A stretch of DNA of 64,000 bases, from positions 248,001 to 312,000 of IMG/VR virus record IMGVR_UViG_3300030673_000004. One strand, 5' to 3'. How positions within the stretch are numbered: the first letter of the stretch is position 1; the number at the start of each line of letters is the position of its first letter. Position numbers and translations under genes: made by a program. This document shows, one piece after another, positions 41,789 through 62,960 of the stretch. Under the pieces are notes generated by a model. It was not told where the DNA came from. It ran no database searches and saw only the letters and a list, made by a program, of their open reading frames with translations.

Positions 41789-42346
41789 ATGGCTAATACA
41801 ATCGAAGAAGTCAGCGAAACAGAAGTTCCGGAAACAAACTCTACCACAGAAGTTTTGACCGAAGCTCAAGTTATTGCTGAGACTCCCGTTGTCGAGACGG
41901 CGGAGGACTTGCCCATCACAACCAATGACAATATTGTCGTAAAGACAATCGAGTCCGATCCGGCTGTGTATGATGAGGCATTGTTCCATACTGCAATCTT
42001 TTATAAGGCAATCAAGGATCTCACCGATGGTACCCAGGATACCATCGCAATCAATAACTCACAGCAAGGTCACGTTGCCTATCTGCTGAGTCTGGACGCT
42101 TTTACAGCGTTGTCACCAAATGCAACTCAAACATACACCATCACAACAAAGAGTCTGACATGGGCTAAAAACAGCTCTCGTGTTTTCTCTAAGGCTGTGA
42201 AACCTAGTGTTATTTTTGCACTGCAGACTAGATCCCTGCAGACAAACAACATCGGCGGTCACAAAGTATGGACACCGACTACGGTTGCCTACCTAGTCAA
42301 CCCGGCAATCTATGCAGATCTGATTACCCCCACAGTAATCCCATAG
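41789..42346 (+). CDS. hypothetical protein with acidic N-terminus
   Basis: AAGGAG RBS; terminator follows. Confidence 0.8.
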   Translation: MANTIEEVSETEVPETNSTTEVLTEAQVIAETPVVETAEDLPITTNDNIVVKTIESDPAVYDEALFHTAIFYKAIKDLTDGTQDTIAINNSQQGHVAYLLSLDAFTALSPNATQTYTITTKSLTWAKNSSRVFSKAVKPSVIFALQTRSLQTNNIGGHKVWTPTTVAYLVNPAIYADLITPTVIP

Positions 42347-42378
42347 CTGTAATCATAAGCAACCCGTATGAACTTCTT

Positions 42379-42406
42379 AGGGCGAAGGATTTTCCTTCGC
42401 CCTTTT
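42379..42406 (+). terminator. intrinsic terminator
   Basis: AGGGCGAAGG/CCTTCGCCCT plus T-tract. Confidence 0.8.
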
Positions 42407-42422
42407 AGTTTAGGAACGTAGC

Positions 42423-42944
42423 GTGGATTACGAAGCAACACAAGAACTGCTATCTAAATATCGACAGAGCACAAGACCCTCTGTATATTCTGCTACAACC
42501 CAGCAAGAAACTGAAATATCTACTGATTTTGAGGATGAGCTCATACTAATGGACAATAGCGTCAAGCGGTCCTTGATTGAACGTTTACGTAATATAAGCT
42601 CAACAACGACAACAAACACCATAGCCGTTAATCTGTTAACAGATGCAACAGATGCCGATATTGCTGATGAAGAAGATCGTGCATCTGAACTACAATTTAA
42701 GATTGGCGATCTTCAAACATTTGAAAAGAAACTCACAGATACATCCTCTTTAGCTGAAATGACTTCTGTTGTTGGTGTATTAACTAAAAATGCAGGATCT
42801 GCTTTGTTTGAATATGATCAAGCAATCAATAGATCTATTCATAGCTCGCTACTAGCTGATTCAGTATCAAATGAAAATTCATCATATACAAAACAAGAAC
42901 TCAGTTCATGGATAAGTGTCATATCAACATATATAACAGCTTAA
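42423..42944 (+). CDS. hypothetical protein, probably structural
   Basis: AGGA RBS; heads the fibre module. Confidence 0.7.
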   Translation: MDYEATQELLSKYRQSTRPSVYSATTQQETEISTDFEDELILMDNSVKRSLIERLRNISSTTTTNTIAVNLLTDATDADIADEEDRASELQFKIGDLQTFEKKLTDTSSLAEMTSVVGVLTKNAGSALFEYDQAINRSIHSSLLADSVSNENSSYTKQELSSWISVISTYITA

Positions 42945-42960: not shown

Positions 42961-45105
42961 ATGTCCACCACAAATAACATTGTCTTCTCATCTAAAGTAT
43001 TTGACACAGAAACTACCACAGATACATCTGGAAACAGTACAACATCTGTTGCTCTGACAGAACAATTTGCTGCTGATGATAAGCTATTCAGCCGCGTCTA
43101 TGTTAATAAATACGGTATTGTTACAGGCGGGCGTTTCGCTGAAGATGCTGGACTCCCACCGGATCCTGAATTCACGGGGCATATCGGTTTACGTGTACCT
43201 GCAGGGACTACAGATCAGCGACCTACAAAAGGTACCGCTATAATTAGGTATAACACCGACTTAAACGCCTTTGAAGTATATGAAGCCGGTGCCTGGACAC
43301 AACCATTTGAAGCTACCAACATGGGAGCCGTAACTACAAGCATATTACCAGCAGTACAATCGTCGGAGCTGTTTCAAATTGATGTAGGGAATGTATCGCT
43401 ACCTTTTCGGAGCGGTCAATTTGGTAGAATCGGTTTATCTAGAAAATCTGTACTCCTAGGCTCCGATACAGCAGATGGTGTTCTTGCTAATTACAATAAT
43501 ACACTATATTGGGGTGGCCAACCTCTAGGCAACCAAGGTAATCAGGGTGCTACTGGAGCTCAGGGGAGCCCAGGTAATCAAGGTGTTACCGGAGCTACTG
43601 GAGTTCAAGGTCCGCAAGGATTCGTAGGACCTCAGGGTAGTCAAGGGACAACTGGAGCACAAGGCAACCAAGGGTTTCAGGGTATTGCAGGTTCTCAAGG
43701 TGTAGCAGGAACACAAGGGCCTCAGGGATTTACTGGAGCTCAAGGTACTCAAGGGAACCAAGGTGTAATTGGAGCTCAAGGTACTCAGGGCAACCAAGGG
43801 AATCAAGGATCAGCAGGTACTTTCATAGTCACTACTACACTGTTTGTAGACTGCAACCGAGTAGACACCTATACGGCAACAGGAACATTAAGCTTTCCCT
43901 ATAAAACATTGGCTGCTGCTTTAGCTACTGTTACAGCCGCTACTCAGATAATTATGGCCCCTGGATCATATACTGAATCGGTAGCATCATACCCAGCATA
44001 CCCACTAGTTGTACACGGTAATGGAAGCACCTTAACACTGTCTGTTGCAACCACACTCACTAATAATTATACAGCGTATGACCTTAATGTAGTTGCTGCT
44101 AATGGCGTAACCTATTCTGGTGCGACAGCAACTACTAAATTTATCCTCAGAAATGGTAGTCGCAAAGGACCCTTAGCATTAACAGCAGGTATACTAGACG
44201 CACAGGCATGTACGCAAACATGGAATACTACATCAGATAAAGTTACTGTTAGTGGAACAGGACAATTAATTGAAATAGCTTGTATAAATACGTTGCCAAT
44301 AGTACAAAACAGTACAAGCTCTATTGTTTTTGTAGAAAACTGCAATTGGAATACATCTAGAGATAGCACATACCTAATTGAATCTAGTGCTGGGCAAATT
44401 AGCGTAGCAAATACAGTTGTTGCTAATACATCGGTCACAGCCGGAGGCGGTATCTATATCCATAATGCACAAACGGCAGCAGCCCCTAATGCTGTTGCTA
44501 ACTGTGTTATAGGTGCTGTAACCGCTGTTAATCTCGCATCTGGCGCAACTTTATATAGTAAAGTTGCTACTACAGGCACAGCCACATTAACAACTGCGGC
44601 TGCTGTTCCTGATTTGATCGGTGTATCTGGTCTTGCAGGTAGTCTAACACCAACAGCCGCAAATACATATACAATTGGTACTGTCGCATTAGACCTATCA
44701 GCTATCTACGCTCGCACACATGCAGGTGCCGGTGCAACTACCTTCGGCAGCACCTCGTATGCCACAACCATTACAGGTAGCTCTATTGCTCTTGGACAAG
44801 GACAAATACAAGGCCCCTCGGTATCTCAAGGAACAGCACTTTCATTAGTAGCACTTACACCACCTAACATCTTAGCAACAGCCGCATTTACATTGACGTT
44901 ACCAACCGCGTCGGCAACCTATAAAGGAATGACCTGGCTACTGTCGTCAGCCTCTTATATCATTACATATAGTGGTACATTTAAGTATTCAATAACTAAA
45001 GGTACATGGACAACCATATCAGCATCAACCTATGCTACTACTGCTGGCTATCTGCAGCACTGGATTTACTGTGATGGCAGTACTTGGTTTGTTAATCTAG
45101 ACTAA
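42961..45105 (+). CDS. tail-fibre-like protein with collagen G-X-Y segment and probable beta-helix
   Basis: VPAGTTDQRP..IRYNTD.N.FE.Y motif; G-X-Q/T repeats about 43528-43815; G.LSFPYKTL.AA...G.YTE. Confidence 0.75.
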   Translation: MSTTNNIVFSSKVFDTETTTDTSGNSTTSVALTEQFAADDKLFSRVYVNKYGIVTGGRFAEDAGLPPDPEFTGHIGLRVPAGTTDQRPTKGTAIIRYNTDLNAFEVYEAGAWTQPFEATNMGAVTTSILPAVQSSELFQIDVGNVSLPFRSGQFGRIGLSRKSVLLGSDTADGVLANYNNTLYWGGQPLGNQGNQGATGAQGSPGNQGVTGATGVQGPQGFVGPQGSQGTTGAQGNQGFQGIAGSQGVAGTQGPQGFTGAQGTQGNQGVIGAQGTQGNQGNQGSAGTFIVTTTLFVDCNRVDTYTATGTLSFPYKTLAAALATVTAATQIIMAPGSYTESVASYPAYPLVVHGNGSTLTLSVATTLTNNYTAYDLNVVAANGVTYSGATATTKFILRNGSRKGPLALTAGILDAQACTQTWNTTSDKVTVSGTGQLIEIACINTLPIVQNSTSSIVFVENCNWNTSRDSTYLIESSAGQISVANTVVANTSVTAGGGIYIHNAQTAAAPNAVANCVIGAVTAVNLASGATLYSKVATTGTATLTTAAAVPDLIGVSGLAGSLTPTAANTYTIGTVALDLSAIYARTHAGAGATTFGSTSYATTITGSSIALGQGQIQGPSVSQGTALSLVALTPPNILATAAFTLTLPTASATYKGMTWLLSSASYIITYSGTFKYSITKGTWTTISASTYATTAGYLQHWIYCDGSTWFVNLD

Positions 45106-45129: not shown

Positions 45130-46035
45130 ATGAAACTTGAATACAAACCACGGCCATTACTTTACTCGGAAGCTGGTGGTGGAATCTATGGCGTTGGTCC
45201 CTGTCGCTATGTACATGAACTTGAACGAGCCTTAAATAAATCTATCTGCGATCTTGCTGACGTATTTATTGGTACATCTATTGGAGGTGTTGATTCAAGT
45301 TTTATGGCTACGGGGCATAGTGGAAGTAATTGTTTACAACTTCATCGAGATAATCAAAAAGCCATATTTGGTGATGAAAACTTATTGTATGAAACAGTAA
45401 AATGCGGTGCTCAGTATGATGACTCGGCCATTGTAGGCATGCTCAAGAAACAACTGGGCAATGCCACCATGGATCAAGCACTAAAACCACTGTATCTAGT
45501 TGCTTGGGATATAATTAAGTGTCAAGTTAGGATATTTGGACCACAAGATAAAGATATTCCTATTTGGTATGCCGCTAGATGCAGTATGGCCGCACCAACA
45601 TACTTCAAAATAATGGACAAACGGTATATAGACGGAGGAGTAGCTGCTAATGACCCAGCCATGCTTGGAATTGCTGCCGCTTACCTGGATGGCTACCTTA
45701 CACCAGACATGCGTGTACTTAATTTAGTTACCTCAGGAGATACACCCGATAAAAGCCCTGTTGATGAAGACGCATTTATACTTACACAAGTAACTGATGA
45801 AATACTACCAGCGCTTACTTCAGGTAACAGCGCAGGTGTTGGTCTAATGCTTAAATTTGTACGCCAATTGATGTCGGATCTTGGTAGAAACATGCAGTTT
45901 TATCGGGTTAACCCAAATAGTCCTGATTATAAATTAGATGCTGTTAGCAAAGCAACGGACATTGAAAATATATGGGCAACCAAATACCAAGAAGATGCTG
46001 TCAGTCTAACCAGCTTTATGGTAACTGATTCCTAA
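45130..46035 (+). CDS. patatin-like phospholipase
   Basis: GGGIYG, GTSIG nucleophile elbow, SMAAPTYF, IDGGV.ANDP. Confidence 0.9.
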   Translation: MKLEYKPRPLLYSEAGGGIYGVGPCRYVHELERALNKSICDLADVFIGTSIGGVDSSFMATGHSGSNCLQLHRDNQKAIFGDENLLYETVKCGAQYDDSAIVGMLKKQLGNATMDQALKPLYLVAWDIIKCQVRIFGPQDKDIPIWYAARCSMAAPTYFKIMDKRYIDGGVAANDPAMLGIAAAYLDGYLTPDMRVLNLVTSGDTPDKSPVDEDAFILTQVTDEILPALTSGNSAGVGLMLKFVRQLMSDLGRNMQFYRVNPNSPDYKLDAVSKATDIENIWATKYQEDAVSLTSFMVTDS

Positions 46036-46092
46036 GTCTAATTAGTTTCGGCAAATAACCTCTGTTTAGACAATGTGCTAATAGAGGAACCA

Positions 46093-49000
46093 ATGCCAAG
46101 AACACATCTACGTGCTGCACAATTAGCTGACGGTGGAACGCAAGGTCAGGCTGTATTAAGAAATGCAGCCGGTGATCTGTACTTCGGTGATGTCGTAACT
46201 GAGGGTATTCAAGGGCCTCAAGGAGATACTGGATCCCAGGGACCGCAAGGTGTTCAAGGTTCAACAGGTGCTACTGGTGCTCAAGGGGCACAAGGGGTAA
46301 CGGGTGCTACCGGGCCTCAAGGTAGCCAAGGAACATCTGGCATAAATGGTTCTATTGGTGCTACTGGTGCTACTGGTGCTCAAGGACCACAAGGCCATAT
46401 AGGTAATACAGGGCTAAAAGGCGATATAGGTGTCCAAGGAGCAACGGGAGCACAAGGGCCTCAAGGAGCTACTGGTATTACGGGTGCGCAAGGAAACCAA
46501 GGTACTATTGGAGCTCAAGGTAGCACAGGTAGCCAAGGCAGCACAGGTGCTACTGGTGCTCAAGGTTCAATAGGGCCTCAAGGTAGCCAAGGTTTAACAG
46601 GTGCAAAAGGTGATATTGGTTCTCAAGGCAACCAGGGTAATCAAGGTGTAATCGGTTTAACGGGAGCACAAGGTGTTCAAGGTGTTCAAGGAACTACCGG
46701 TGCTACTGGCTCTCAAGGAAACCAAGGGTCACAAGGACTAACAGGTAGTGGCTCTCAAGGAGCAACGGGTGCTACCGGACTTCAGGGTAATCAAGGATTC
46801 CAAGGATACTTAGGTAATCAAGGAGCTATTGGTGCTCAGGGAGCTACTGGTTCTCAAGGACTTCAAGGTAGCCAAGGTTTAATCGGAGCGACTGGATCTA
46901 CGGGTGCGCAAGGTACAACAGGTGCTACTGGAGTTCAGGGTAATCAAGGTAATCAGGGTGCTGTTGGAGCACAAGGCTCTCAAGGACATCAGGGTAATCA
47001 AGGATTACAAGGAGCTACAGGGCTTCAAGGTAATCAAGGATTCCAAGGGTTAACGGGTAGTGGAGCGCAAGGTGTACAAGGAGCTACAGGGCTTCAAGGT
47101 AATCAAGGATTCCAAGGGTTAACAGGTAGCGGAACACAAGGAGCTCCGGGTGCTGTTGGTGCTCAAGGGCTTACAGGATCTCAAGGATCTGTCGGCGCTC
47201 AGGGTGTTCAAGGAGCTACCGGTGCTACTGGAGTTCAGGGTAATCAAGGATTCCAGGGTGCTCAAGGAGCTGTTGGTTCTCAGGGTGCCACCGGAGCTGG
47301 CACGCAAGGAGCTACTGGTGCTCAAGGTAATCAAGGTAATCAAGGTGTAATCGGGTTAACTGGTGTTCAAGGTGTTCAAGGAGCAACAGGTAGCCAAGGG
47401 CATCAGGGATTCCAAGGATTCCAAGGATTCCAAGGATTCCAGGGTGTTACGGGCGCTGGTGTTCAAGGAGCTACCGGAGCTCAAGGTACTCAGGGCAACC
47501 AAGGATTCCAGGGTGTTATTGGTTCTCAGGGTGTTCAAGGAACAACTGGATCTACGGGTGCTCAAGGATTACAGGGGAACCAAGGTAATCAAGGTGTAAT
47601 CGGAGCTCAAGGATCTATGGGGTTACAAGGATCTACCGGAGCTACTGGTGCGCAAGGAACACAAGGAACAACCGGATTTACAGGTGCTCAAGGAAATCAA
47701 GGACCTCAAGGTGTAATCGGTGCGACGGGAGCTCAAGGTACTCAGGGCAACCAAGGATTCCAGGGTGTTATTGGTTCTCAGGGTAATCAAGGTAATCAGG
47801 GTGTTCAAGGAGCTACTGGAGCAGGAACACAAGGTGTGCAAGGAACAACTGGATCTACGGGTGCGCAAGGAAATCAAGGTACACAAGGTGCTACTGGTGC
47901 TCAAGGAACACAAGGAAGTACAGGAGCTACGGGTGCGCAAGGTACTGTTGGTGCTACTGGATCTCAGGGAAACCAAGGATTCCAAGGTGTTACTGGGGCC
48001 ACGGGAGTACAAGGTGCTCAGGGTACTATAGGCGTTACGGGTTCTCAAGGATTACAAGGTAATCAAGGAAACCAGGGTACCATCGGTGCAACAGGTGCTC
48101 AAGGAGCTACTGGACTTCAGGGTACTATTGGAGCACAAGGTGCTACTGGTGCTCAAGGAAATCCAGGTAGTCAGGGATCCCAAGGACTAACAGGTAGTGG
48201 AGCACAGGGTGTCCAAGGAGCTACCGGAGCACAAGGTAATCAAGGTGCTACGGGTGCGCAAGGTAATCAAGGTGCTACGGGTGCGCAAGGTACAACAGGT
48301 ACGGCTGGTAATCAAGGTACTACTGGACTTCAGGGTAATCAAGGAAACCAGGGTGCTGCTGGTGATCAAGGCACACAGGGACATCAGGGTACCGTCGGCG
48401 CGACCGGAGCACAAGGTAGCCAAGGACTTACAGGCTCTCAGGGTGCAACTGGATCTACCGGAGCACAAGGTGCAACAGGTGCTCAAGGTGCTACTGGTGC
48501 TCAAGGAAATCCAGGTAGTCAGGGATCCCAAGGACTAACAGGTAGTGGCGCTCAAGGAGCTCAGGGTAACCAAGGAGCACAAGGAATAGCTGCCGTTGGG
48601 ACTATCTATTACCTACACAATACAGCGTCAGACGTAACACCTTACTTAACACTAACACGTACAACACCAGTAGCAAGTGAAACAACAGCAACTTCAACAT
48701 TAGCAACAACAAATACCGATGTAGCTATAGCCGCATTTATATCAACAGCAGGTGATCCAAATATCACAATGATACCTGCAGGTATGCTACAAGCACAGTT
48801 GTATCTATCTGTATCAAATATAGATAGTAATACAACATCACAAATTTCATTCTATAAACGATCAACTGATTCTAGCGAGACACTGTTATTTAGTGCAACA
48901 TCTAACGATATAAATGCAACTACGGCTACATTGTATACACTACAAGCTGTAGTATCCTCTGATATAGTATTGGCTACATCGGATCGACTACTCATAAAAA

Positions 49001-52000
49001 TAACAAGTAGAACAACAAGCACGCTAAGCCCATCAATAACTTTATACTACGATGGTGTATCTCATGCCAGTGTACTATTATCCCCGATTGTTGTTGGTAC
49101 TCAAGGAGCTACCGGATCTCAGGGTAATCAAGGATTCCAAGGTGTTACTGGGGCCACGGGAGTACAAGGTGCTCAGGGAACAACTGGACTACAGGGCAAT
49201 CAAGGTAATCAAGGATTCCAAGGATCTGTCGGTGCTCAGGGAGTCCAAGGAGCAAATGGCCTGCAAGGAACACAAGGATCGGTTGGCGTCCAAGGAGCAA
49301 CAGGTGCGCAGGGAACTATCGGGGCTACGGGACTTCAAGGTACTGCTGGTGTAACGGGAACGCAGGGTGCTCAGGGAGCAACAGGAGCTATTGGTTCTCA
49401 AGGCAACCAGGGTAATCAAGGTAATCAGGGTGCAATAGGTACTACGGGTTCTCAAGGAAACCAAGGTACACAAGGTACACAAGGTGCTACTGGATCTCAA
49501 GGAGCACAAGGAGCACAAGGACTTACTGGGGCTCAAGGTGCAGCAGGCGCTCAAGGTTCTACCGGATCTCAAGGTAATCAAGGGCATCAGGGATTCCAAG
49601 GACTAACCGGTAGTGGAACACAAGGAGCTCAGGGTGCTGTTGGTGCAACGGGTGCTCAGGGCAATCAAGGTAATCAAGGTGTAATCGGACTACAGGGGAC
49701 TCAAGGACTAACAGGTACTGCTGGTGCTCAAGGCAACCAGGGTGCCCTTGGTGCTCAAGGTTCTACAGGTTCTACCGGTGCGCAGGGTACACAAGGTGCA
49801 ACAGGGGATCAAGGTGCTACTGGACTTCAGGGTAATCAAGGAAACCAAGGTACCATCGGTGCAACGGGAGCACAAGGAACAATTGGATCTGCGGGTTCTC
49901 AAGGTAATCAAGGTAATCAAGGTGTAATCGGGTTAACGGGAGCACAAGGAAACCAGGGTGCTGTTGGTGCTCAAGGTACACAAGGTAATCAAGGATCCCA
50001 GGGTACCCTTGGTACTACAGGAGCACAAGGATCTACGGGTGCAACGGGAGCACAAGGTAATCAAGGAGCTCAGGGAGCTATTGGTGCGCAGGGTGCGCAG
50101 GGGGCTACCGGAGCTACTGGACTTCAGGGTACTGCAGGTTCTCAAGGTTCTCAAGGTTCTCAAGGTTCTCAAGGTAATCAAGGTAATCAAGGATCTGTCG
50201 GTGCTCAGGGAACTACTGGGGCTACAGGATCTCAGGGAAACCAGGGTAATCAAGGTACAACAGGAGATCAAGGACTTACTGGTGCTCAAGGTACAACAGG
50301 TGCTCAAGGTAATCAAGGAGCTCAGGGATTCCAAGGAACTATCGGTGTAGCAGGTACGGCAGGATCTCAAGGAAACCAGGGTAATCAGGGATCCCAGGGT
50401 ACAACAGGTACAACGGGAGCACAAGGTAATCAAGGATCCCAGGGAGCTGTTGGTGCTCAAGGGCTTATAGGATCTCAAGGATCTGTCGGTGCTCAGGGAA
50501 CTACTGGGGCTACAGGATCTCAGGGAAACCAGGGTAATCAAGGATTCCAGGGGACAACAGGTGCTCAAGGGGATACTGGAACTACAGGTACAACTGGAGC
50601 ACAAGGGAATCAAGGATTTCAAGGGACTATGGGCGCTACTGGACTTCAGGGTACTACAGGATCTCAAGGGTCTGTCGGTGCTCAGGGAACTACTGGGGCT
50701 ACTGGATCTCAAGGTAATCAGGGTAATCAAGGTTCTACTGGAGCAACAGGTACCCAAGGAGCTACTGGATCTCAAGGTAATCAAGGAAACCAAGGCTTAA
50801 CTGGTGTACAAGGTGCATCAGGAGCTCAAGGCGCTACTGGGCTTCAGGGTACTACTGGATCTCAAGGTAATCAAGGTAATCAAGGAGTTATCGGTTTAAC
50901 AGGACTACAAGGATCTGTCGGCGCTCAAGGTACACAAGGAGCTACCGGAGCTACCGGAGCACAAGGTACTCAGGGTACTCAGGGTAATCAAGGGTTCCAG
51001 GGTGTTATTGGTGCTACTGGATCTCAGGGTAATCAAGGGTTCCAGGGAGATACTGGAGTTCAAGGTTCTACGGGAGCTACTGGATCTCAAGGTAGCCAAG
51101 GTTCTACTGGAGCAACAGGTACTCAGGGGAACCAAGGTAATCAAGGTGTAATTGGAGTTCAAGGTAGCCAGGGGACAACTGGAGCACAAGGTACTCAGGG
51201 GAACCAAGGATTCCAGGGTGTTATTGGTGCTACAGGATCTCAGGGATCTACAGGTGCAACGGGATCTCAGGGGAACCAGGGTAATCAAGGAAACCAAGGC
51301 TTAACTGGTGTACAAGGTGCGGCAGGAGCTCAAGGTAGCCAAGGTTCTACTGGAGCAACAGGTACCCAAGGAGCTACTGGATCTCAAGGTAATCAAGGGT
51401 TCCAGGGGTTCCAGGGTACAACAGGTGTCGGCGCTCAAGGCGCTCAAGGTACGCAGGGTGTTCAAGGTGCAACCGGCGCAGGTTCCCAAGGACCTCAAGG
51501 AGCTACCGGAGCACAAGGAAGCCAAGGAACGCAGGGGAACCAGGGAGTGGCAGGGAGCGGCAGTGGTACTACAACTCTTACATCAGTTGCACATTTCGCG
51601 CTGACAGAGACAGTTACAAACACAGTAGCATATTTCTATACAGAGCGTGCCCTTGGTACAACGCAAGACGACAAGCAGCGTTCAGGAAATAGTAGTGGTA
51701 TGAGTTATGCATCTGCCTGTTCTGGCTGGGTGTGCCCATTCACAGGTACTATCACACGAGCTGTATTTGTAATTGCGGCTGCTGGAGTAAACAACGGAAC
51801 AGTCACATATCCATGCGCATACAACGTAGCACTGTATCGTGTAGGTTTTGCAACTGAGCAAGATGCGGCTGTCAACAGTGGTTCCCCTAATACAATTTCA
51901 ACAACACTTGCCTCCGGTGTTGGAACTTTCTCGGTAGCCGCTGTTAATACTCGCTCAGTAGTAACGCTTAGCATAGCTGTAACAGCCGGTGATGTTCTGG

Positions 52001-52089
52001 CACTAAAGTTTGTTAATGGCTCCGGCGCGTCAACCGTTGCAATGTCTCAAATGGCATTTGTTTCACTTGTTATTGAAGGAACAATCTAA
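46093..52089 (+). CDS. giant collagen-like fibre protein
   Basis: GAGGA RBS before ATG 46093; two G-X-(Q/T) tracts separated and capped by globular domains. Confidence 0.9.
46204..48585 (+). repeat. collagen-coding 9-bp period repeat, tract 1
   Basis: GGN-NNN-CAR/ACN period, about 795 codons. Confidence 0.95.
49096..51567 (+). repeat. collagen-coding 9-bp period repeat, tract 2
   Basis: same period, about 820 codons. Confidence 0.95.
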
Positions 52090-55013
52090 TGGCGTGTACA
52101 TATAGCTTTAGAAATACAACTACATCGGATATTACGCTAAATAACTCATTAGTTATCCAGGCACTATCTACAAAAACAGTATTCGATGTAGATACAATGA
52201 CAGTAACCGATGCTTGGTCAATCGAGCATTCTCTAGATGGAGCTGGATCAGGAACAACAGAGATAGCTCAATTACTATCTACAGGTAGTCTTGTATTTGT
52301 AATAGATGGTATAGATCAAACGTCTGATTCTTTTTATCCCGCATGGAAGACATTCTTTGGAAGCATCGTTGCTACAAATGTGGCTGAAAGTGTTCACGTT
52401 TTAGATCAAGCTGGGTATATAGGAACAGCAGCACCAAAAATAAAAACAAATGTAGTAACTACTGCTAATGCTGTAGATAGGACAGGATTTTTTATTGGCC
52501 CTGTCAATACAACGAATACACTTACAGTATCATCTACAGGTACATTAATATCACAGTGTGATCGACAACTACTATATTGCATGCAACCAGGTGTAACACC
52601 GGGTCATTGGTTTCAGTATATAGACAGTTACGGGTCAACTATGACACCGGCAAGTAATTCTGCACTGTCTACATCAGTTGTATCCTCTGGAAATCTAGCA
52701 GTCGCGATCACATTACTTGGTGATACAACATCGCACTACCCGTATGCCGGTGTAGCGTTTGACTTTACAGACAATGGGTCCGCAACAACTGCTAACAAAG
52801 CTACATTTAATGTATCTGCTTATACAGGAATAACAATTACTTATAAATCCTCAACTGTTATTAAACTACAACTAGAAGGTAATGCTGACTCCGACGGAGC
52901 TAACTGGTTCTACTCGCTGCCAATTGCATCAACATCTAGTACAGTGACACTGACATGGGCTCAGTTTTCACAACCCACATGGGTATCTACTACACAAACA
53001 CGAGCAATTCCTACAGCAGCACTAGCAAGTATCAAGTTCCAATATGATACAGCGCAAGCAGCAACTTCATTTACTGTATATAAAGTAGCATTTACAGGTA
53101 CAGGACCATTCATGGTCTCGCCTACAGCGCTCTCAAAAAAGTATAGCGTTCAAGCAGTACAACTTATAAATCAATGGTTTAATCAATTCTACTATGAAGA
53201 TACTACAGGAACATTAGGTAGAATAGCATGGGTTAGTGGATCTAATGTAGATACAACAATCACAGTATCTGAGGGTATCGGTTATGGCATGCTGTTAGCT
53301 ATAATAGCAGCAGCGTCACCCGGTGTTAGCGAGACATATCGTAAACGATTTGATCATATGTGGGCATTTTACCAGCTAAATAAAGATGGTAACGGCCTAA
53401 TGAATTGGAAGGTACAAAACTTTAATGCTACCGTGGTTGGTTCTGGTGCAGCACCGGACGGGGATCTTGATGTTGCTAAAGCACTACTTCTAGCATATGA
53501 ACGTTTCATGGATGTATCTTATTTAATAGCTGCTAGAAAACTAATGGCATCTATTTGGACATATGAAATTATATCAAAAGTAACAACGTCAGGAGGAACT
53601 AGATATCTTATTGCGCCGGGTGACAGCTACTCTAGTTTCTTCAATCCTAGCTATGCTAAGCTCGCAGCAATAAAATTATGTGCATATTATGATAATGTAA
53701 CTACACATTATTGGAATACTTTATATACAGATACTCTTTGGTTTCTAAATGCAAATCAAACATCAGTAGGGTCATCGTGCTTCTATCTACCATCTAATTG
53801 GTGCGATAAGAATGGTACACCTGTAATAGGTAACTCATCACTAGGCTTTGGCTGGGATGCTTGTCGAGTATTATACCACGTAGCAGAAGCATTCTACTGG
53901 TTTGGTGATTCTGCAGCACGTGCATATCTACAAACAATAGCAAGTACTTCATTAGCCACAACACTCATATCGTCTCCAATGAGTTTACAGCTAACAATTA
54001 AACCGGATGGAACATCAGGTCAATCATATAACTCAACATCTTCTACATGGTCTGCTACAGCTACAAGTGACTACAATACAGCCGCTATAGGAACTATTCT
54101 AACAGCACTTACAACAACATCAACATTCACAGAAGCGCAAGCAGAATCTGTTCTAGACACAATTCTTGCATATACAACAGAAAATACAGACTACTTTAGA
54201 TTAGCACTTAAGGCTTTTATACTTTCTGTTATTACTGGAGTATCTACCAGATATGCCAAAGATGCTGGATCGGCATCAGCTATAGCATACATAGTAAATG
54301 TTGGCGCTCCTTATGGATCACAAACAGGGAATGCCCAACTAGCTATAATGGCCGATGGTAGTGGTGTTCAAGTAAGAACATACTCTAACGGGACATGGAC
54401 GACAAGTTCAATTAGTGGCTCTCAAGGAGCACAAGGAAACCAGGGGCCTCAAGGTACATCCGGTGGACCTCAGGGTAACCAAGGTACAACAGGAGCACAA
54501 GGGCCTCAAGGTACGGCTGGTGTGCAAGGAGTACCGGGCGCTCAAGGTAGTCAGGGAAACCAGGGTAATCAAGGACCCGCTAATGGTGCCCAAGGAGCTA
54601 CTGGAGCACAAGGGGCTCAGGGACCTCAAGGATTTCAAGGTGCCCAAGGAATCCAGGGAGCAGGAGTACAGGGGGCTCAAGGACCTCAAGGTAACCAAGG
54701 CCCTGCTAATGGGCCACAAGGAACTACAGGATCTCAGGGAAACCAAGGAGATCAAGGTGTAATTGGCACACAAGGAGTACCGGGCGCTCAAGGTAGTCAG
54801 GGAAACCAGGGTAATCAAGGAGCTAAAGGAGCACAAGGTACTCAGGGAGTACAGGGCACAACGGGAGCTCAGGGAGTACAAGGTTCAATAGGAACCCAAG
54901 GTGCGACGGGAGCACAAGGTACTCAGGGTAATCAAGGATTCGCGAGCATTGTAGTTGTCTCAACTATGCCAAGTACTCCAGCAGCAAACACACTTTATAT
55001 AGTGACAACCTAG
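52089..55013 (+). CDS. CBM11-like + glycoside hydrolase family 8 + collagen-like fibre protein
   Basis: VSEGIGYGML, GLMNW, AAPDGDLDVAKALLLA, FNPSY, GWDACR (GH8); upstream YAGVAFDF..YTGITITYKS..LTWAQFSQP.W; G-X-Q tail; ends MPSTPAANTLYIV. Confidence 0.8.
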   Translation: MACTYSFRNTTTSDITLNNSLVIQALSTKTVFDVDTMTVTDAWSIEHSLDGAGSGTTEIAQLLSTGSLVFVIDGIDQTSDSFYPAWKTFFGSIVATNVAESVHVLDQAGYIGTAAPKIKTNVVTTANAVDRTGFFIGPVNTTNTLTVSSTGTLISQCDRQLLYCMQPGVTPGHWFQYIDSYGSTMTPASNSALSTSVVSSGNLAVAITLLGDTTSHYPYAGVAFDFTDNGSATTANKATFNVSAYTGITITYKSSTVIKLQLEGNADSDGANWFYSLPIASTSSTVTLTWAQFSQPTWVSTTQTRAIPTAALASIKFQYDTAQAATSFTVYKVAFTGTGPFMVSPTALSKKYSVQAVQLINQWFNQFYYEDTTGTLGRIAWVSGSNVDTTITVSEGIGYGMLLAIIAAASPGVSETYRKRFDHMWAFYQLNKDGNGLMNWKVQNFNATVVGSGAAPDGDLDVAKALLLAYERFMDVSYLIAARKLMASIWTYEIISKVTTSGGTRYLIAPGDSYSSFFNPSYAKLAAIKLCAYYDNVTTHYWNTLYTDTLWFLNANQTSVGSSCFYLPSNWCDKNGTPVIGNSSLGFGWDACRVLYHVAEAFYWFGDSAARAYLQTIASTSLATTLISSPMSLQLTIKPDGTSGQSYNSTSSTWSATATSDYNTAAIGTILTALTTTSTFTEAQAESVLDTILAYTTENTDYFRLALKAFILSVITGVSTRYAKDAGSASAIAYIVNVGAPYGSQTGNAQLAIMADGSGVQVRTYSNGTWTTSSISGSQGAQGNQGPQGTSGGPQGNQGTTGAQGPQGTAGVQGVPGAQGSQGNQGNQGPANGAQGATGAQGAQGPQGFQGAQGIQGAGVQGAQGPQGNQGPANGPQGTTGSQGNQGDQGVIGTQGVPGAQGSQGNQGNQGAKGAQGTQGVQGTTGAQGVQGSIGTQGATGAQGTQGNQGFASIVVVSTMPSTPAANTLYIVTT

Positions 55014-55014: not shown

Positions 55015-55611
55015 ATGGCAACAACATTAAATTACATAAATGCTTCTGGTGTATCTAAATCCATAAAGAGTATAGCTTACTCTAATGCATCAGCAGTACT
55101 GAATACTGCCAAAACAGTATATTTTGGCAGTACTAACGTTTGGTCTGCTACGACAGCCGCATGGGTAACTGGATCAACAGATGGTCAAACTATGTACTTA
55201 GCTGCATATACGCCAGCAGCAGCGATGTCTGTTGCATCCTTCTCTATGATATTTAGTATCTCATCTAATTATAACGTGACTTGGGGCATTTATACACTAT
55301 CGGGGTCCACGTATACAGCACTTGCTAATAGTTACGGTACAACTACAACTGGAGTAACTATCACAGCAGGTGCTGTTTTAGGAACAGCAACAGAATACAC
55401 CTACACAAAAACATACACAGCGTCATACCCAACATTGAGTGCTGGGACAACGTACTATTTTTGGGTAGGTGAGCGGTATCAACCATATAATCTATTAAAT
55501 GGAAGCAGCGGGTGTCCTGGCTATGCACCAGCATGGGCAGCCGGATCAAGCTCCATGACATACACAGCAGGTGCAAAGAGTAACATTTACTTATCTGTAG
55601 TTGCACACTAA
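55015..55611 (+). CDS. Thr/Ser/Tyr-rich fibre-tip-like protein
   Basis: K.VYFGSTNVWS N-terminal motif typical of proteins following fibre genes. Confidence 0.6.
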   Translation: MATTLNYINASGVSKSIKSIAYSNASAVLNTAKTVYFGSTNVWSATTAAWVTGSTDGQTMYLAAYTPAAAMSVASFSMIFSISSNYNVTWGIYTLSGSTYTALANSYGTTTTGVTITAGAVLGTATEYTYTKTYTASYPTLSAGTTYYFWVGERYQPYNLLNGSSGCPGYAPAWAAGSSSMTYTAGAKSNIYLSVVAH

Positions 55612-55682: not shown

Positions 55683-56921
55683 ATGGAACTTCCTACTGTT
55701 TCTATCTTTACACCGACGCATAACCCTAAGCGCCTCATTGAAGCATACCAATCTATCAAAGATCAAGATTTCCTTGAATGGGTAATTTTATACAACAATG
55801 GAGCAACACCTATTGGCTTTGATGATCCACGTGTCAAGGAAGTTATTGATACCCACGACGGTGATGACAGCGCCTGGATTGGACGACTAAAACATGAAGC
55901 CTGTGCTTCCTGTATAGGTGATATCCTACTAGAACTAGATCACGATGATCTACTGATGCCCTTAGCGCTAGAGCATGTACGCGAAGCCTTCTTGGACGTT
56001 GAGATTGGTTTTGTCTACTCAAACACTATCCATGCAAATGCCGATCTAACCACGTCATGCCCACGTTTTGACGAACGCTACGGATGGAAGTATCGTCAGG
56101 TAAATGTCAATGGCAACTTACTTGATGAGCACATCTCGTTTGATCCGCTGCCCACAACAATCTCACGTATCTGGTACGCCCCTAACCACCTAAGGGCATT
56201 CCGTCGTTCTTTATATGAACAGATTGGTGGATACAATGTCGGTATGCGTGTACTTGACGACCTGGACCTCATGTGCCGTCTATATGCTATTACAAAATTC
56301 CGGCATATCAATGAAGGTCTTTACATCTATAGATATGAAGATAATACCTTCGCTAAAGATGGAATTAACCAAGAGATTCAAAACAATGTCTACCGTATTC
56401 ATGATATGTACATTGAGTCTCTTGCCGAGTCGTGGTCTACAGCGTGTGGCTTGCGCAAGATTGAACTCGGTGGCAGACTAGCGGCACGTCCAGGCTTTGA
56501 AACTGTGGACCTGTTTGATGCAGATATCATAGCAGATCTTAACAGTATCTGGCCCTTCAAGGATAACTCTGTTGGCGTCATCCGAGCTTACGATGTTTTT
56601 GAGCATCTTAAGAACCCCATATTCGTCATGAACGAACTGCATCGTGTGCTCGCTCCAGGTGGATACGCTATCATTCAAGTACCTAGCACAGAAGGTACAG
56701 GGGCAGCCTCGGATCCTACTCATGTGTCGTGGTGGAATGAGCGATCCTTTACATACTACACCCAAGCAGAGCGTGCTAAATACCTACCAGACTTCAAGGG
56801 TAGGTTCCAAGCACTACGTTTGTTCACTACAGAACCTGATGCAGAACGCTGCTGCTGGGTGCAGGCACACTTGATGAAGCTGGATAACGCTATTCGCGTT
56901 CCTGGAGAAGTCTTGATCTAA
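55683..56921 (+). CDS. glycosyltransferase family 2 fused to class I SAM methyltransferase
   Basis: VSIFTPTHN, LELDHDD (DxD); C-terminal IELGG, DL..IWPF.DNSV, DVFEHL, RVL.PGG, DPTH. Confidence 0.85.
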   Translation: MELPTVSIFTPTHNPKRLIEAYQSIKDQDFLEWVILYNNGATPIGFDDPRVKEVIDTHDGDDSAWIGRLKHEACASCIGDILLELDHDDLLMPLALEHVREAFLDVEIGFVYSNTIHANADLTTSCPRFDERYGWKYRQVNVNGNLLDEHISFDPLPTTISRIWYAPNHLRAFRRSLYEQIGGYNVGMRVLDDLDLMCRLYAITKFRHINEGLYIYRYEDNTFAKDGINQEIQNNVYRIHDMYIESLAESWSTACGLRKIELGGRLAARPGFETVDLFDADIIADLNSIWPFKDNSVGVIRAYDVFEHLKNPIFVMNELHRVLAPGGYAIIQVPSTEGTGAASDPTHVSWWNERSFTYYTQAERAKYLPDFKGRFQALRLFTTEPDAERCCWVQAHLMKLDNAIRVPGEVLI

Positions 56922-58276: not shown

Positions 58277-58981
58277 GTGCCACAAGAAAATCCCGGCAAG
58301 CGTGTCTACATCAATATCCTGAACAAGTGCAATGAGCGATGTCCCTTCTGCTGTATGTACAGTGGACCTGAGAAAAACACGATCATGCCGTTTTCTACAT
58401 TTGAAGATATTCTCCAGAACGAACGTACAGGCCCTCTTGTTGAAGTTCAACTTGAGGGAGGTGAGCCTTTACTGCACCCAAATCTATACCTGTTCTTAGA
58501 ATATATCCACTACCTAGATGTACCTAAGATCATCATTACCACAAATGGTATTCTTCTGCGCAAACATCTGCCTAAACTGACGGAGTTTGCAAGCAGAACA
58601 CAAACAACTCTCGTGATTAAAGTTAGTGTAAACTCGCACCTCCTCAAGCAGCCGACTAAACTTGGCATGGATCACTTTGAGCAGCTCAAAGATCTATACC
58701 TCGCTACCGAATTCCTCCCGAATGTAATCATCCTGTTCAATGTTCGACTGCGAGCAAATCATGAAGATGATGATATTGTAGAAGGGCTGCGCAGAACAGA
58801 CTTGCTGAAACACTCCAATGTCTTCCAGCTACAATCTTACGGAAGATACTCAGAACAAACCGAATATGAAAAGCCTGTAATCGTACAGAACATTAAACAA
58901 TGGAACATCTACTCCAGTGATGGTATCTGTTTCGGGCAGGATCTAGTTGCGAGAAGTAATCATGAAAAGGATGTGAGGTAA
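58277..58981 (+). CDS. radical SAM protein
   Basis: CNERCPFC, GGEP, TTNG. Confidence 0.85.
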   Translation: MPQENPGKRVYINILNKCNERCPFCCMYSGPEKNTIMPFSTFEDILQNERTGPLVEVQLEGGEPLLHPNLYLFLEYIHYLDVPKIIITTNGILLRKHLPKLTEFASRTQTTLVIKVSVNSHLLKQPTKLGMDHFEQLKDLYLATEFLPNVIILFNVRLRANHEDDDIVEGLRRTDLLKHSNVFQLQSYGRYSEQTEYEKPVIVQNIKQWNIYSSDGICFGQDLVARSNHEKDVR

Positions 58982-60029
58982 TGGTAACTATGAAATTTGC
59001 ACCACTACGTGAAGCTCGCCAGGAATCACACAATGTTGAGGAATACAAACTGCTCCCATTCATGTTTGAGTCAGGACCACGCCAGGTCTACAGTAACATG
59101 AATCTGTCCATCATGATTGATGATTACTGCAATGCGAACTGTCAATTCTGTGTAGCTCAACTACGCTACGAAAACCGAGCTAAGCAGTACCAGAAGCCCA
59201 AGATTCACAATGATGACACCTATTTCGCACGTCTGGATGAGATGCTTTCGTTTCTGGCACCGCTCAATCCTAGCATCAGCATCACGGGTGGCGAACCCAG
59301 CAAGTCCCGCAGGCTCCCGCAGATTCTTGAACTTAGCAATAAGCACGGTTACCGCAAGCGGACCCTGACGACGAATGGCAGTGGACTCTTTGATGAACTG
59401 AACGGCAAAACTATGCTGCAGCACATCATTGATAACAAGTTCCAGCACTTGAATATCAGCAAAGCCCACTATGATGAAGAGACCAATCGGCGTATCATGC
59501 AATATGATGCTAGTACCGGATATTGCTCGAATGAAATACTGAGCCGAATTGCAACTTATGCCCTGGCAAACAATCTGCGTCCTCGTATGAGTTGTGTGCT
59601 TCTCAAGAGTGGTATATCTACCCTGGAAGACATGATTCATTATATGGAGTTCTATCAGAGTCTGGGTATGGACAATGTCATCTTTCGTGAGCTCATGGAT
59701 TATGACAAAGTTTCTATGGACAACGCCCCAAAACTAGCGTTCAATCAGGAAAACAAAGTGTATCTTGCTGATCTGTGGAAGCAGCTTGACGGAGATACTC
59801 GGTTCACTCCTGTGCGCAACCTGATGGGCTACTACTATTATGTAGAAGTCTACAAGTATCAGAACGTAGACACATGTGTTCTGAAGGTGCCAACCTTGTC
59901 AAGCTGTACAACGAAAAGGCTAAGCACCCGGAAGTTGTCTACGAGATGGTGTTTCATCCCAATGGCAACCTTAATGGCAGTTGGGTTGATTCCGAAGATA
60001 TTCTTCAGAAATACCAGGGAACTCTGTAA
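58981..60029 (+). CDS. radical SAM protein with apparent frameshift near 59870
   Basis: CNANCQFC, TGGEP, TTNG; a natural-looking C-terminus lies in another frame ending TAA 60029 just before the next RBS. Confidence 0.75.
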
Positions 60030-60040
60030 AAGGACAATAC

Positions 60041-60232
60041 ATGTTTATTGCTGTTGGGCCGTATGCAGAAAACACAAGCGATCAGTTACCCGATGTCATC
60101 ATTGATGTGTGCTCTGATCTTACCTATCAAGAACGCTGCAGGTATACAGAATTAATTGCAGACGCAATCAATAGAGGACTACCTAAAAACTTGTCCAGGG
60201 AAGACTTACAGCCAAAAGTACAAAAAGTTTAA
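60041..60232 (+). CDS. hypothetical protein
   Basis: AAGGA RBS. Confidence 0.6.
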   Translation: MFIAVGPYAENTSDQLPDVIIDVCSDLTYQERCRYTELIADAINRGLPKNLSREDLQPKVQKV

Positions 60233-62947: not shown

Positions 62948-62960
62948 GTTGAAAGGATTT

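What the first reader, a model, noticed from the sequence alone, without database searches (positions are those of the whole stretch)
52089..55013. Phage-encoded GH8 glucanase with a carbohydrate-binding module on a collagen stalk
Seen: CBM11/CIA30-like segment, then a GH8 domain with the catalytic motifs present (acid E in VSEGIG, D in APDGD, base-position D in GWDACR), then about 55-60 G-X-Q triplets. It is TAATG-coupled to the giant collagen gene. Known: GH8 enzymes are inverting endoglucanases, xylanases and chitosanases; typical phage depolymerases are beta-helix or sialidase types. Inference: a virion appendage that binds or cuts cellulose-like glucan (plant fibre, biofilm or host EPS) to reach attached cells. 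The CBM11+GH8 combination hints at a cellulolytic host such as Fibrobacterota.
Basis: partly seen in the sequence, partly recalled or inferred. Interest (0 to 1): 0.78.

Follow-up and report, generated by a model that had tools for sequence, protein, structure and literature searches.

The report
Huge-phage fibre protein carrying a GH8 glucanase
A 375-kb phage from peat encodes, among its tail-fibre genes, a protein that joins a glucan-binding module and an apparently active family-8 cellulase-type enzyme to a collagen-like shaft; this enzyme type has not been seen on phage fibres before.

Summary
ORF 52089..55013 (+, 974 aa) encodes five parts:
- an N-terminal segment (aa 1-130) of unknown fold;
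- a beta-sandwich (aa ~147-339) whose model best matches C. thermocellum CBM11, then CIA30;
- a GH8 domain (aa 344-725; Pfam 1.5e-19; model TM 0.82 to CelA) with the acid E395, D457, Y522 and base D590 all present and invariant in the family;
- a conserved neck;
- 57 G-X-Y triplets (Y = Q in 40), followed by a 22-aa tail.

The gene shares one base (TAATG) with the upstream 2004-aa collagen gene.

The genome is a ~375-kb tailed phage from peat. A Baseplate_J gene lies 12.6 kb downstream. Three relatives keep the module order: fibre, patatin lipase, fibre X, GH8.

No GH8 occurs in PHROGs or BFVD. Among 50,697 deposited phage genomes there is one doubtful case.

Best reading: a trimeric, virion-borne fibre enzyme that binds and cuts a beta-1,4-glucan-type polysaccharide. 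Presence in the virion, the substrate, and which end attaches are all inferred. The Fibrobacterota host hint has some support but is unproven; the careful GH8 tree does not resolve a donor.

Verdict: new variant of a known kind (phage fibre depolymerase). Interest is moderate.

The parts
52089..55013 (+). Whole gene: 974-aa fibre protein with CBM11-like module, GH8 domain and collagen-like repeat
52089..52478 (+). N-terminal segment aa 1-130 ('type A'), no known family, low model confidence; candidate docking segment
   Evidence: pLDDT <50 for aa 1-117. Shared only with P0002 and P0003 at 37-42% identity. It changes type together with the C-terminal domain of the upstream fibre.
52527..53105 (+). 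Beta-sandwich aa ~147-339, CBM11/CIA30-like putative glucan-binding module
   Evidence: Foldseek top hits are CtCBM11 (E 7e-7) and CIA30 (E 4.5e-6). Profile against 1v0a gives E 7e-4. Homologous modules occur on GH5 and GH8 enzymes and T9SS proteins, and 6 of 48 hit Pfam CIA30.
53118..54263 (+). GH8 catalytic domain aa 344-725. Catalytic codons: E395 at 53271-53273, D457 at 53457-53459, Y522 at 53652-53654, D590 at 53856-53858
   Evidence: Pfam. phmmer to CelA 1cem E 4.6e-19, with residue-level alignment. Model TMt 0.82, rmsd 3.3 A to 1cem. Residues invariant in the family. Codons checked.
54264..54416 (+). Conserved 'neck' aa 726-776 between GH8 and the shaft; short beta strands; candidate trimerisation element
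   Evidence: Conserved in all full-length relatives. Monomer model pLDDT ~52.
54417..54944 (+). Collagen-like repeat, 57 G-X-Y triplets in 5 runs (aa 777-952), Q-rich
54945..55010 (+). 22-aa C-terminal tail FASIVVVSTMPSTPAANTLYIVTT. A similar tail ends the collagen of the distant relative P0009
46075..52089 (+). Upstream fibre 'X': giant collagen-like protein (532 G-X-Y triplets) with a ~170-aa C-terminal globular domain. Gene callers start it at about 46093. Translationally coupled to the GH8 gene
   Evidence: The C-terminal domain is 53-58% identical to that of the upstream genes of P0002 and P0003.
42961..45105 (+). Fibre protein: conserved N-terminal 190 aa, collagen repeat, then a beta-helix-like (DUF1565) part
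45130..46035 (+). Patatin-like phospholipase, conserved at this place in relatives
41789..42944 (+). Two small conserved proteins (185 and 173 aa) that open the fibre module in the window and in relatives
   Evidence: 61-74% identity to L001 and L099
55015..55611 (+). 198-aa protein that starts 1 nt after the GH8 stop; no known family; not conserved in relatives
55683..56921 (+). GT2 glycosyltransferase fused to a methyltransferase; possible fibre-modifying enzyme
   Evidence: Pfam. Homologues lie beside collagen genes in two other phage-like contigs.

Best explanation
The gene encodes a structural fibre protein of a ~375-kb contractile-tailed phage from peat. Shown here: it has a CBM11/CIA30-type beta-sandwich, a complete GH8 (alpha/alpha)6 domain with every catalytic residue of the CelA-type (GH8a) inverting endoglucanases, a conserved neck, and a collagen-like repeat of 57 triplets. 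At 2.9 A per residue the repeat would form a shaft of about 50 nm. Also shown: the gene sits in a conserved block of fibre genes, and its start overlaps the stop of the preceding fibre gene. Inferred: the collagen repeat (helped by the neck) makes the protein a homotrimer. The trimer is mounted on the virion as part of a compound fibre, most likely by its N-terminal segment docking on the C-terminal knob of the upstream fibre X. The three CBM+GH8 heads bind single beta-glucan chains and cut beta-1,4 linkages in a cellulose-like or mixed-linkage polysaccharide that lies between the phage and its host's surface. That polysaccharide could be the host's own exopolysaccharide or the plant fibre that the host colonises. 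The bacterial relatives carry a signal peptide and a T9SS sorting tail. The phage version has neither and carries fibre-forming parts instead, which fits an enzyme delivered on a particle rather than secreted.
For: GH8: Pfam E 1.5e-19. Alignment to CelA places E395, D457 and D590 on E95, D152 and D278, and W440, Y514 and Y522 on W132, W205 and Y215. The 1kwf E95Q mutant shows Q in the acid column, which fixes the register. The residue offset of 32 is confirmed by the entry title. Model pTM 0.85, TMt 0.82 to 1cem. The catalytic residues are invariant in all 12 aligned family members at 27-51% overall identity.

CBM. The closest cellular copies sit on GH5 cellulases in a bacterial chromosome.

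Collagen. Prophage collagen-like tail-fibre proteins are known to form trimers with a collagen stalk (PMC3368898).

Phage and tail context: the same ~375-kb genome was assembled with different break points. It is an IMG/VR entry. There are PHROG hits to phage ParB, GGCT and radical SAM families, and a Tad2-like gene. Baseplate_J (E 3.3e-14) lies 12.6 kb downstream on the same strand.

Module synteny: relatives L001, L099 and L096 keep the same gene order. The upstream fibre gene overlaps or abuts the GH8 start in all six genomes examined. The GH8 N-terminal type and the upstream fibre's C-terminal domain type change together. There is no signal-peptide-like N-terminus and no Por_Secre_tail domain.
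Against: There is no proteomic, imaging or expression evidence; no RNA run holds the gene. No fibre or tail PHROG matches the non-collagen part. The nearest recognised baseplate gene is 12.6 kb away, with modification-type genes in between (GT2-MT, two radical SAM, GGACT, amidoligase). The joint change of N-terminal type and upstream C-terminal domain could be a single recombination block, because the two segments are adjacent in the DNA; it does not prove contact. Substrate specificity within GH8 (glucan, xylan, chitosan, lichenan) cannot be read from sequence. The monomer model says nothing about trimerisation. The window protein has no globular domain beyond the collagen, which is odd for either polarity.
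Confidence: 0.6

Rival explanations
1. It is an auxiliary metabolic enzyme, not a virion part. The phage makes a soluble (possibly trimeric) cellulase during infection. It is released at lysis, or used by the infected cell to free sugars from plant polymers in peat.
For: The closest cellular relatives are secreted fibre-degrading GH8 and GH5 enzymes of Fibrobacterota, Bacteroidota and Myxococcota. The habitat is peat. Viral glycoside hydrolases are commonly annotated as auxiliary genes in soil, rumen and sediment viromes (papers listed).
Against: The protein has no signal peptide or T9SS tail. It is fused to a collagen repeat, as are the neighbouring fibre proteins. It holds a fixed place inside a fibre-gene block and is translationally coupled to a fibre gene in six genomes. 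Its termini are mosaic, which is typical of fibre genes.
Confidence: 0.15
2. It is a fibre or receptor-binding protein in which the GH8 and CBM serve mainly as a lectin-like binding head. It would hold the particle on a glucan surface, and catalysis would be dispensable.
For: CBM-like beta-sandwiches are common in tail-fibre proteins; the BFVD hits are mostly through this domain. The variable C-terminal shafts and tips in relatives look like receptor-binding fibres.
Against: The acid, base, helper Asp and Tyr and the cleft aromatics are invariant or conservatively kept across a family as divergent as 27-51% identity. That pattern points to selection for catalysis.
Confidence: 0.1
3. The target is not a cellulose-like glucan but another beta-1,4 polymer within the range of GH8: xylan, chitosan or deacetylated chitin, lichenan, or a host capsule of unrelated composition.
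For: GH8 includes xylanases, chitosanases, lichenases and exo-oligoxylanases, and all of them match the model nearly as well as CelA does (TMt 0.67-0.79). Identity to any characterised enzyme is only about 23%.
Against: By sequence the best solved relative is the endoglucanase CelA (E 4.6e-19). The next are enterobacterial glucanases (1e-8, 7e-6) and then chitosanases (2e-5); no xylanase reaches E<=1. The appended module resembles CBM11, which binds beta-1,4 and mixed-linkage glucans (6r31 title). Its closest copies sit on GH5 cellulases.
Confidence: 0.25
4. The element is not a phage. It is a bacterial chromosome segment, a tailocin or contractile injection system island, or a eukaryotic giant virus with collagen fibrils.
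For: Most genes have no family match. No capsid, portal or terminase gene was seen in the 64-kb window or in the roughly 19 kb of flanks examined. Baseplate_J also occurs in contractile injection systems. Giant viruses also carry collagen-like and glycosyltransferase genes.
Against: The replicon has a constant ~375-kb size and was assembled with different break points in at least five data sets. It is listed in IMG/VR. Genes are dense, on one strand, with overlapping starts and stops, and Shine-Dalgarno-like motifs precede 26 of 53 ORFs against a 14% background. There are PHROG hits to phage families, and Tad2-like and SocA_Panacea domains.
Confidence: 0.03

Closest known systems
Clostridium thermocellum endoglucanase CelA (GH8, PDB 1CEM/1KWF)
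   Same: Same (alpha/alpha)6 fold (TMt 0.82, rmsd 3.3 A). The same catalytic acid, helper Asp, Tyr and base positions of the GH8a type. The same cleft aromatics.
   Different: Only ~23% identity. CelA is a secreted cellulosomal enzyme with a dockerin. This protein has no secretion signal, carries an N-terminal CBM11-like module and a C-terminal collagen repeat, and is phage-encoded.
CBM11 of C. thermocellum Lic26A-Cel5E (PDB 1V0A/6R31) and the CIA30 (NDUFAF1) fold
   Same: Best structural matches to aa 150-345 (E 7e-7 and 4.5e-6). A weak but significant profile-to-sequence match to the C-terminal half of CtCBM11 (E 7e-4).
   Different: 17% identity. No Pfam CBM_11 or CIA30 hit for the window protein itself. 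The ligand-binding residues were not compared, and binding is untested.
T9SS-secreted GH8 and GH5 enzymes with CIA30-like modules in Fibrobacterota, Bacteroidota and Myxococcota
   Same: The same two module types on one polypeptide. In several loci the order is also the same, CBM then GH8 (L016, L023, L039, L060, L083). They are the closest cellular homologues (30-37% identity for GH8, 30-39% for the module).
   Different: The cellular proteins have signal peptides and Por_Secre_tail sorting domains and no collagen. The phage family forms its own long-branched clade (support 100/100).
Virion-associated polysaccharide depolymerases of phages (tailspikes and tail fibres)
   Same: A trimer-forming fibre protein with an enzymatic domain, encoded among tail-fibre genes, with mosaic termini. 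The presumed role is clearing a glycan barrier. [quoted passage not shown]
   Different: The catalytic module is a GH8 (alpha/alpha)6 barrel with a CBM, not a beta-helix or beta-propeller. No GH8 or endoglucanase appears in that review. None appears in PHROGs or BFVD. Among 50,697 phage records there is one bacterial-looking region.
Collagen-like prophage tail-fibre proteins (E. coli O157 EPclA and relatives)
   Same: A phage fibre protein with a G-X-Y shaft whose length varies in multiples of three. In EPclA, trimerisation comes from flanking domains (PMC3368898).
   Different: EPcl proteins have PfN and PfC fibre domains and no enzyme. Here the collagen is C-terminal to an enzyme and ends in a 22-aa tail instead of a globular domain.
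BcsZ/CMCax, the GH8 endoglucanases of bacterial cellulose synthase operons
   Same: GH8 fold (TMt 0.70-0.76). They act on bacterially made cellulose, which is one candidate substrate here.
   Different: More distant than CelA by sequence (E 1e-8 or weaker). They are periplasmic single-domain proteins.

Membership tests
Glycoside hydrolase family 8 (CAZy GH8 / Pfam PF01270) | Significant sequence match to the family model | tested here: met
   PF01270 E 1.5e-19, 70.7 bits against a cutoff of 24. CelA 1cem E 4.6e-19.
Glycoside hydrolase family 8 (CAZy GH8 / Pfam PF01270) | (alpha/alpha)6 barrel fold | tested here: met
   Model pLDDT 83.9, pTM 0.85. The top 45 PDB hits are all GH8; best is 1cem, TMt 0.82.
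Glycoside hydrolase family 8 (CAZy GH8 / Pfam PF01270) | Catalytic proton donor Glu (CelA E95), with helper Asp (D152) and Tyr (Y215) | tested here: met
   E395, D457 and Y522 align to these positions and are invariant in the family.
Glycoside hydrolase family 8 (CAZy GH8 / Pfam PF01270) | Catalytic base Asp at the CelA D278 position (subfamily GH8a) | tested here: met
   D590 in GWDACR aligns to D278 and is invariant.
Glycoside hydrolase family 8 (CAZy GH8 / Pfam PF01270) | Inverting hydrolysis of a beta-1,4-linked glycan | not testable with these tools
   Needs an enzyme assay.
Carbohydrate-binding module family 11 | Sequence membership (Pfam CBM_11 / CAZy-level similarity) | tested here: not met
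   No Pfam hit at E<=1 for aa 1-345. Only a marginal profile hit to CtCBM11 (E 7e-4 over 73 residues).
Carbohydrate-binding module family 11 | Beta-jelly-roll fold like CtCBM11 | tested here: met
   6r31/1v0a are the top Foldseek hits, E 7e-7, TMt 0.59-0.61.
Carbohydrate-binding module family 11 | Concave-face aromatic and polar residues that bind a single beta-glucan chain; measurable binding | not tested
   No residue-level structural alignment was available; binding needs an experiment.
CIA30 / galactose-binding-like superfamily (Pfam PF08547) | Match to the family model | tested here: inconclusive
   The window protein has no hit. Homologous modules in 6 of 48 relatives do hit (best E 2.6e-12), including P0015 aa 855-997, which aligns with aa 169-319 here. 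NDUFAF1 gives a structural hit at E 4.5e-6.
Collagen triple-helix repeat protein | Long runs of G-X-Y | tested here: met
   57 triplets in runs of 6, 12, 9, 4 and 26. Pfam Collagen E 7e-21.
Collagen triple-helix repeat protein | Trimeric triple helix | not testable with these tools
   Needs CD, SEC-MALS or EM.
Phage virion-associated depolymerase / tail fibre | Encoded by a tailed phage | tested here: met
   A ~375-kb replicon with different assembly break points, listed in IMG/VR, with Baseplate_J and PHROG hits. Capsid, portal and terminase genes were not seen, because only ~83 kb of the genome was examined.
Phage virion-associated depolymerase / tail fibre | Located in the tail-fibre or baseplate gene module | tested here: met
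   Flanked by collagen and beta-helix fibre genes, in a block conserved in L001, L099 and L096. Baseplate_J lies 12.6 kb downstream.
Phage virion-associated depolymerase / tail fibre | Physically present in the virion and active on a host-associated glycan | not testable with these tools
   Needs virion proteomics and assays.

The most novel reading that the evidence does not exclude
The virion carries a working cellulase that acts on plant or matrix cellulose rather than on a host-made receptor glycan. The phage particle would use a CBM plus an endoglucanase, at the end of fibres hundreds of nanometres long, to hold on to and cut through fibre in order to reach cellulolytic hosts attached to it. 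Free virions would then be direct, if minor, agents of polymer breakdown in peat. This would be a way of finding hosts that has not been described for phages.
Probability: 0.15. Interest if true: 0.8.

Novelty: new variant of a known kind. Interest (0 to 1): 0.55.

Why it matters
Known phage fibre enzymes are mostly beta-helix or beta-propeller proteins aimed at capsules and O-antigens of well-studied pathogens. A GH8 endoglucanase with a glucan-binding module, built into the fibre apparatus of an uncultured huge phage and conserved in about ten relatives, adds a catalytic fold and a substrate class (cellulose-like beta-glucans). It also points to how phages might reach hosts living in or on polysaccharide matrices such as plant fibre or cellulose biofilms. 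It gives a testable case for separating 'auxiliary metabolic' from structural roles of viral glycoside hydrolases in soils. It also offers a natural trimeric, collagen-stalked cellulase scaffold.

Tried and rejected
- blastn and tblastn of the gene against 50,697 phage records found nothing. Two other large window proteins also found nothing.
- PHROGs on the non-collagen part, and on three relatives, gave no family at E<=0.1. All PHROG 'tail fiber' hits of the full protein come from the collagen repeat alone and were not used as evidence.
- The only GH8-like hit in deposited phages is in Microcystis phage MaAM05. It lies among mtnBCD, gabD and zur genes and looks bacterial, so it was rejected as a precedent.
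- Text-search hits for 'GH8' in virome papers turned out to be GH87 and the like.
- Donor or host from the GH8 tree: a quick tree put the phage clade on a Fibrobacterota-dominated side (SH-aLRT 96). A careful tree of 65 rows leaves the long phage branch at an unresolved junction, so the donor claim was dropped.
- Host from the GT2-methyltransferase gene: its homologues are themselves mostly on phage-like contigs. One sits in a Paludibacteraceae bin that looks like a prophage. No host call was made.
- No paralogue of the N-terminal segment, neck or tail exists elsewhere in the window.
- The C-terminal domain of the window's giant collagen protein is not homologous to that of the 376-aa upstream proteins in L001 and L099. 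This led to the type A / type B comparison.
- No RNA run holds the gene.
Full report
**1. What is in the sequence**

ORF 52089..55013 on the + strand encodes 974 aa. Independent JGI and ENA gene calls on the same genome give the same product. Its ATG shares one base with the TAA stop of the preceding 2004-aa ORF 46075..52089 (tctAATGgcg). The next ORF, 55015..55611, starts one base after its TAG stop. Pfam finds Glyco_hydro_8 at aa 350-617 (E 1.5e-19, 70.7 bits against a cutoff of 24) and Collagen (E 7e-21). Counting gives 57 G-X-Y triplets in five runs between aa 777 and 952, with Q in the Y position in 40 of them. At 2.9 A per residue, the figure used for prophage collagen fibres in PMC3368898, this is a shaft of about 50 nm.

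**2. The GH8 domain**

phmmer against PDB sequences puts C. thermocellum CelA first (1cem, E 4.6e-19). The residue alignment places:
- E395 on the proton donor E95;
- D457 on D152;
- Y522 on Y215;
- D590 on the base D278;
- the cleft aromatics W440 and Y514 on W132 and W205.

The E95Q mutant entry 1kwf shows Q in the acid column, which fixes the register. The 1cem title 'residues 33-395' confirms the numbering offset. An AlphaFold model of aa 130-775 (pLDDT 83.9, pTM 0.85) matches only GH8 structures in its top 45 PDB hits, best 1cem (TMt 0.82, rmsd 3.3 A). In an alignment with eleven relatives at 27-51% identity, E395, D457, Y522 and D590 are invariant. The domain is therefore a complete GH8 of the CelA (GH8a) type and is very probably active. 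The substrate cannot be read off. CelA-like glucanases are the closest by sequence, and no xylanase reaches E<=1. By fold, however, chitosanases, lichenase and xylanases are nearly as close.

**3. The module in front of the GH8 domain**

A model of aa 1-345 is confident only for aa 150-345 (pLDDT >90; aa 1-117 are <50). Its best PDB matches are the family-11 carbohydrate-binding module of C. thermocellum Lic26A-Cel5E (6r31/1v0a, E 7e-7, TMt ~0.6). Next is the CIA30 assembly factor NDUFAF1 (E 4.5e-6), followed by CBM29, CBM30, CBM4 and CBM6. A profile of the module family hits the CtCBM11 sequence at E 7e-4.

An exhaustive phmmer search of aa 130-345 against 1.8 billion representatives finds 131 proteins, often with two to four copies each. 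Among 48 of them, the Pfam hits are Por_Secre_tail (7 proteins), CIA30 (6), GH8 (5) and GH5 cellulase (4). The two best non-family hits are adjacent GH5 cellulases on a bacterial chromosome. The window protein itself gives no Pfam CBM_11 or CIA30 hit at E<=1. It therefore has the CBM11/CIA30 fold and sits in the matching enzyme context, but it is not a demonstrable member of CBM11.

**4. Is it a phage, and is this the fibre region?**

The identical protein lies on contigs of 375.0-375.8 kb from several peat metagenomes. These contigs have different break points, as expected for a circular or permuted genome. One is IMG/VR entry UViG_3300030673_000004.

Genes in the window are dense and almost all on one strand. 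Shine-Dalgarno-like motifs precede 26 of 53 ORFs, against a 14% background. The few family matches are phage-typical: ParB C-terminal PHROG (2e-33), GGCT, radical SAM PHROGs and a Tad2-like domain.

Walking 10 kb beyond the window end shows a 463-aa Baseplate_J protein (PF04865, E 3.3e-14) on the same strand, 12.6 kb downstream of the GH8 stop. I did not see capsid, portal or terminase genes, but I examined only about 83 of 375 kb.

Around the gene, the order is:
- two small conserved proteins;
- a 714-aa fibre (conserved N-terminal 190 aa, collagen repeat, DUF1565 beta-helix);
- a patatin-like lipase;
- the giant collagen protein;
- the GH8 protein;
- a 198-aa protein;
- a GT2-methyltransferase fusion.

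The same order recurs in three more distant relatives: L001 (a 98-kb contig), L099 and L096. That order is the two small proteins, a fibre with the same N-terminus, a large variable protein, patatin, 'fibre X', then GH8. In L099 the large variable protein is 1602 aa and carries a Fib_succ_major domain (E 2.9e-27).

**5. Mosaic structure and a clue to assembly**

Across the eleven family members the CBM-GH8-neck core is conserved, and both ends vary. The C-terminal part takes several forms: collagen (window, P0006, P0009, P0011), glycine-rich linkers with a small beta domain (P0004, P0005, P0008), or other repeats. The window's 22-aa tail after the collagen recurs in P0009.

The N-terminal segment comes in three types:
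- type A, ~110 aa, in the window, P0002 and P0003;
- type B in P0004-P0008;
- type C in P0009-P0011.

In all six genomes where the upstream gene could be read, it ends at or within 4 nt of the GH8 start. Its C-terminal domain follows the GH8 N-terminal type. The three type-A genomes share one ~170-aa domain (53-58% identity). The type-B and type-C genomes share another (40-62% identity). The shafts in front of these domains range from none to 2004 aa of collagen.

This fits a model in which the GH8 protein docks by its N-terminus on the distal knob of fibre X, as in other compound phage fibres. The two segments are adjacent in the DNA, though, so one recombination block would give the same pattern.

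**6. Host and origin**

The best cellular GH8 relatives (30-37% identity) come from Fibrobacterota, Bacteroidales, Saprospiraceae, Cytophaga and Myxococcota. Several have the same CBM-then-GH8 order. A quick maximum-likelihood tree put the phage clade (100) on the side of a branch (SH-aLRT 96) where nearly all named rows are Fibrobacterota. A careful tree of 65 rows leaves the long phage branch (~1 change per site) at the junction of the two cellular groups without support.

The structural neighbours of the CBM-like module in the ESM Atlas are mostly Fibrobacterota. One sequence hit is a named Fibrobacter T9SS protein, and a relative carries a Fib_succ_major protein. Frequent Shine-Dalgarno-like motifs argue weakly against Bacteroidota; this rests on my own knowledge of SD usage in that phylum. 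Fibrobacterota is thus a reasonable guess but no more, and no direct host link was found.

**7. How new is it?**

- PHROGs has no family matching the CBM-GH8 part of this protein or of three relatives.
- BFVD has no viral protein with this fold. The best TM scores are <=0.35, and most hits run through the beta-sandwich.
- IMG/VR (2.9 million contigs) yields seven GH8-like loci. Only this genome carries the family.
- Among 50,697 deposited phage genomes, the only GH8-like sequence lies in a bacterial-looking part of the Microcystis phage MaAM05 record.

Collagen-like phage fibres as such are well known (PMC3368898), and so are fibre-borne depolymerases. I therefore rate this a new variant of a known kind.

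**8. Verdict**

The sequence-level claims are confirmed. The most likely function is a trimeric, virion-borne fibre enzyme that binds and cuts a beta-1,4-glucan-type polysaccharide near the host (confidence about 0.6). The rivals are a soluble auxiliary enzyme, a binding-only role, and a different GH8 substrate. Virion presence, substrate, trimer state, polarity and host all need experiments.

Noticed in passing
window 46075-52089 (and loci L005-L008): The giant collagen gene differs in length between assemblies of the same genome (1791, 1986, 1998 and 2004 aa), and two contigs break inside it. This is either real repeat-number variation or assembly collapse of the G-X-Q repeats. With 532 triplets it would be roughly 0.45 um long if it were one continuous helix. 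The repeats also produce many spurious long ORFs in other frames and on the opposite strand.
   Followed up: partly
window 55683-56921; L104 10001-11215; L105 8001-9188: The GT2-methyltransferase fusion has over 1600 homologues at about 57-64% identity. In two other phage-like contigs it lies next to collagen-repeat genes: a 359-kb phage with a T4 gp13-like gene, and a Paludibacteraceae-binned contig with an integrase. This suggests a widespread phage enzyme that glycosylates or methylates collagen-like fibres.
   Followed up: partly
window 45130-46035: A patatin-like phospholipase (Pfam E 1e-17) sits inside the fibre-gene block, and patatin genes sit at the same place in relatives L001, L002, L003 and L099. 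It may be a virion-associated or infection-stage lipase.
   Followed up: partly
window 42961-45105: A second enzyme-like fibre: a conserved 190-aa N-terminus, a collagen repeat, then a DUF1565 (pectate-lyase-like beta-helix) region. The module may therefore carry two different glycan-cleaving fibres.
   Followed up: no
window 1440-2462 (- strand): A 339-aa protein whose first 84 residues match the Thoeris anti-defence Tad2-like domain (E 9e-12). It is one of the few minus-strand genes in the window. A SocA_Panacea domain protein lies about 7 kb upstream of the window start.
   Followed up: no
window 12223-13497 and 62886-64000 (continues in L100 11200-14169); L100 14202-15818: Two large proteins carry gamma-glutamyl cyclotransferase (GGACT) domains. 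An amidoligase-like protein lies directly upstream of the Baseplate_J gene. These are unusual companions for a baseplate cluster.
   Followed up: no
window 58277-60105 and 36195-37064: Three radical-SAM-like genes. Two are adjacent and just downstream of the fibre and GT-MT genes, and may be part of a fibre or nucleotide modification pathway.
   Followed up: no
L099 2818-7626: In a related phage the variable slot of the fibre module holds a 1602-aa protein with a Fibrobacter succinogenes major domain (E 2.9e-27) and beta-propeller-like repeats.
   Followed up: partly
L102 (MW495066.1 172408-185055): The deposited 'Microcystis phage MaAM05' record contains a stretch with methionine-salvage genes (mtnBCD), gabD, zur and a stand-alone GH8-like gene. 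It looks like bacterial DNA, so this may be host contamination or a misassembly.
   Followed up: no
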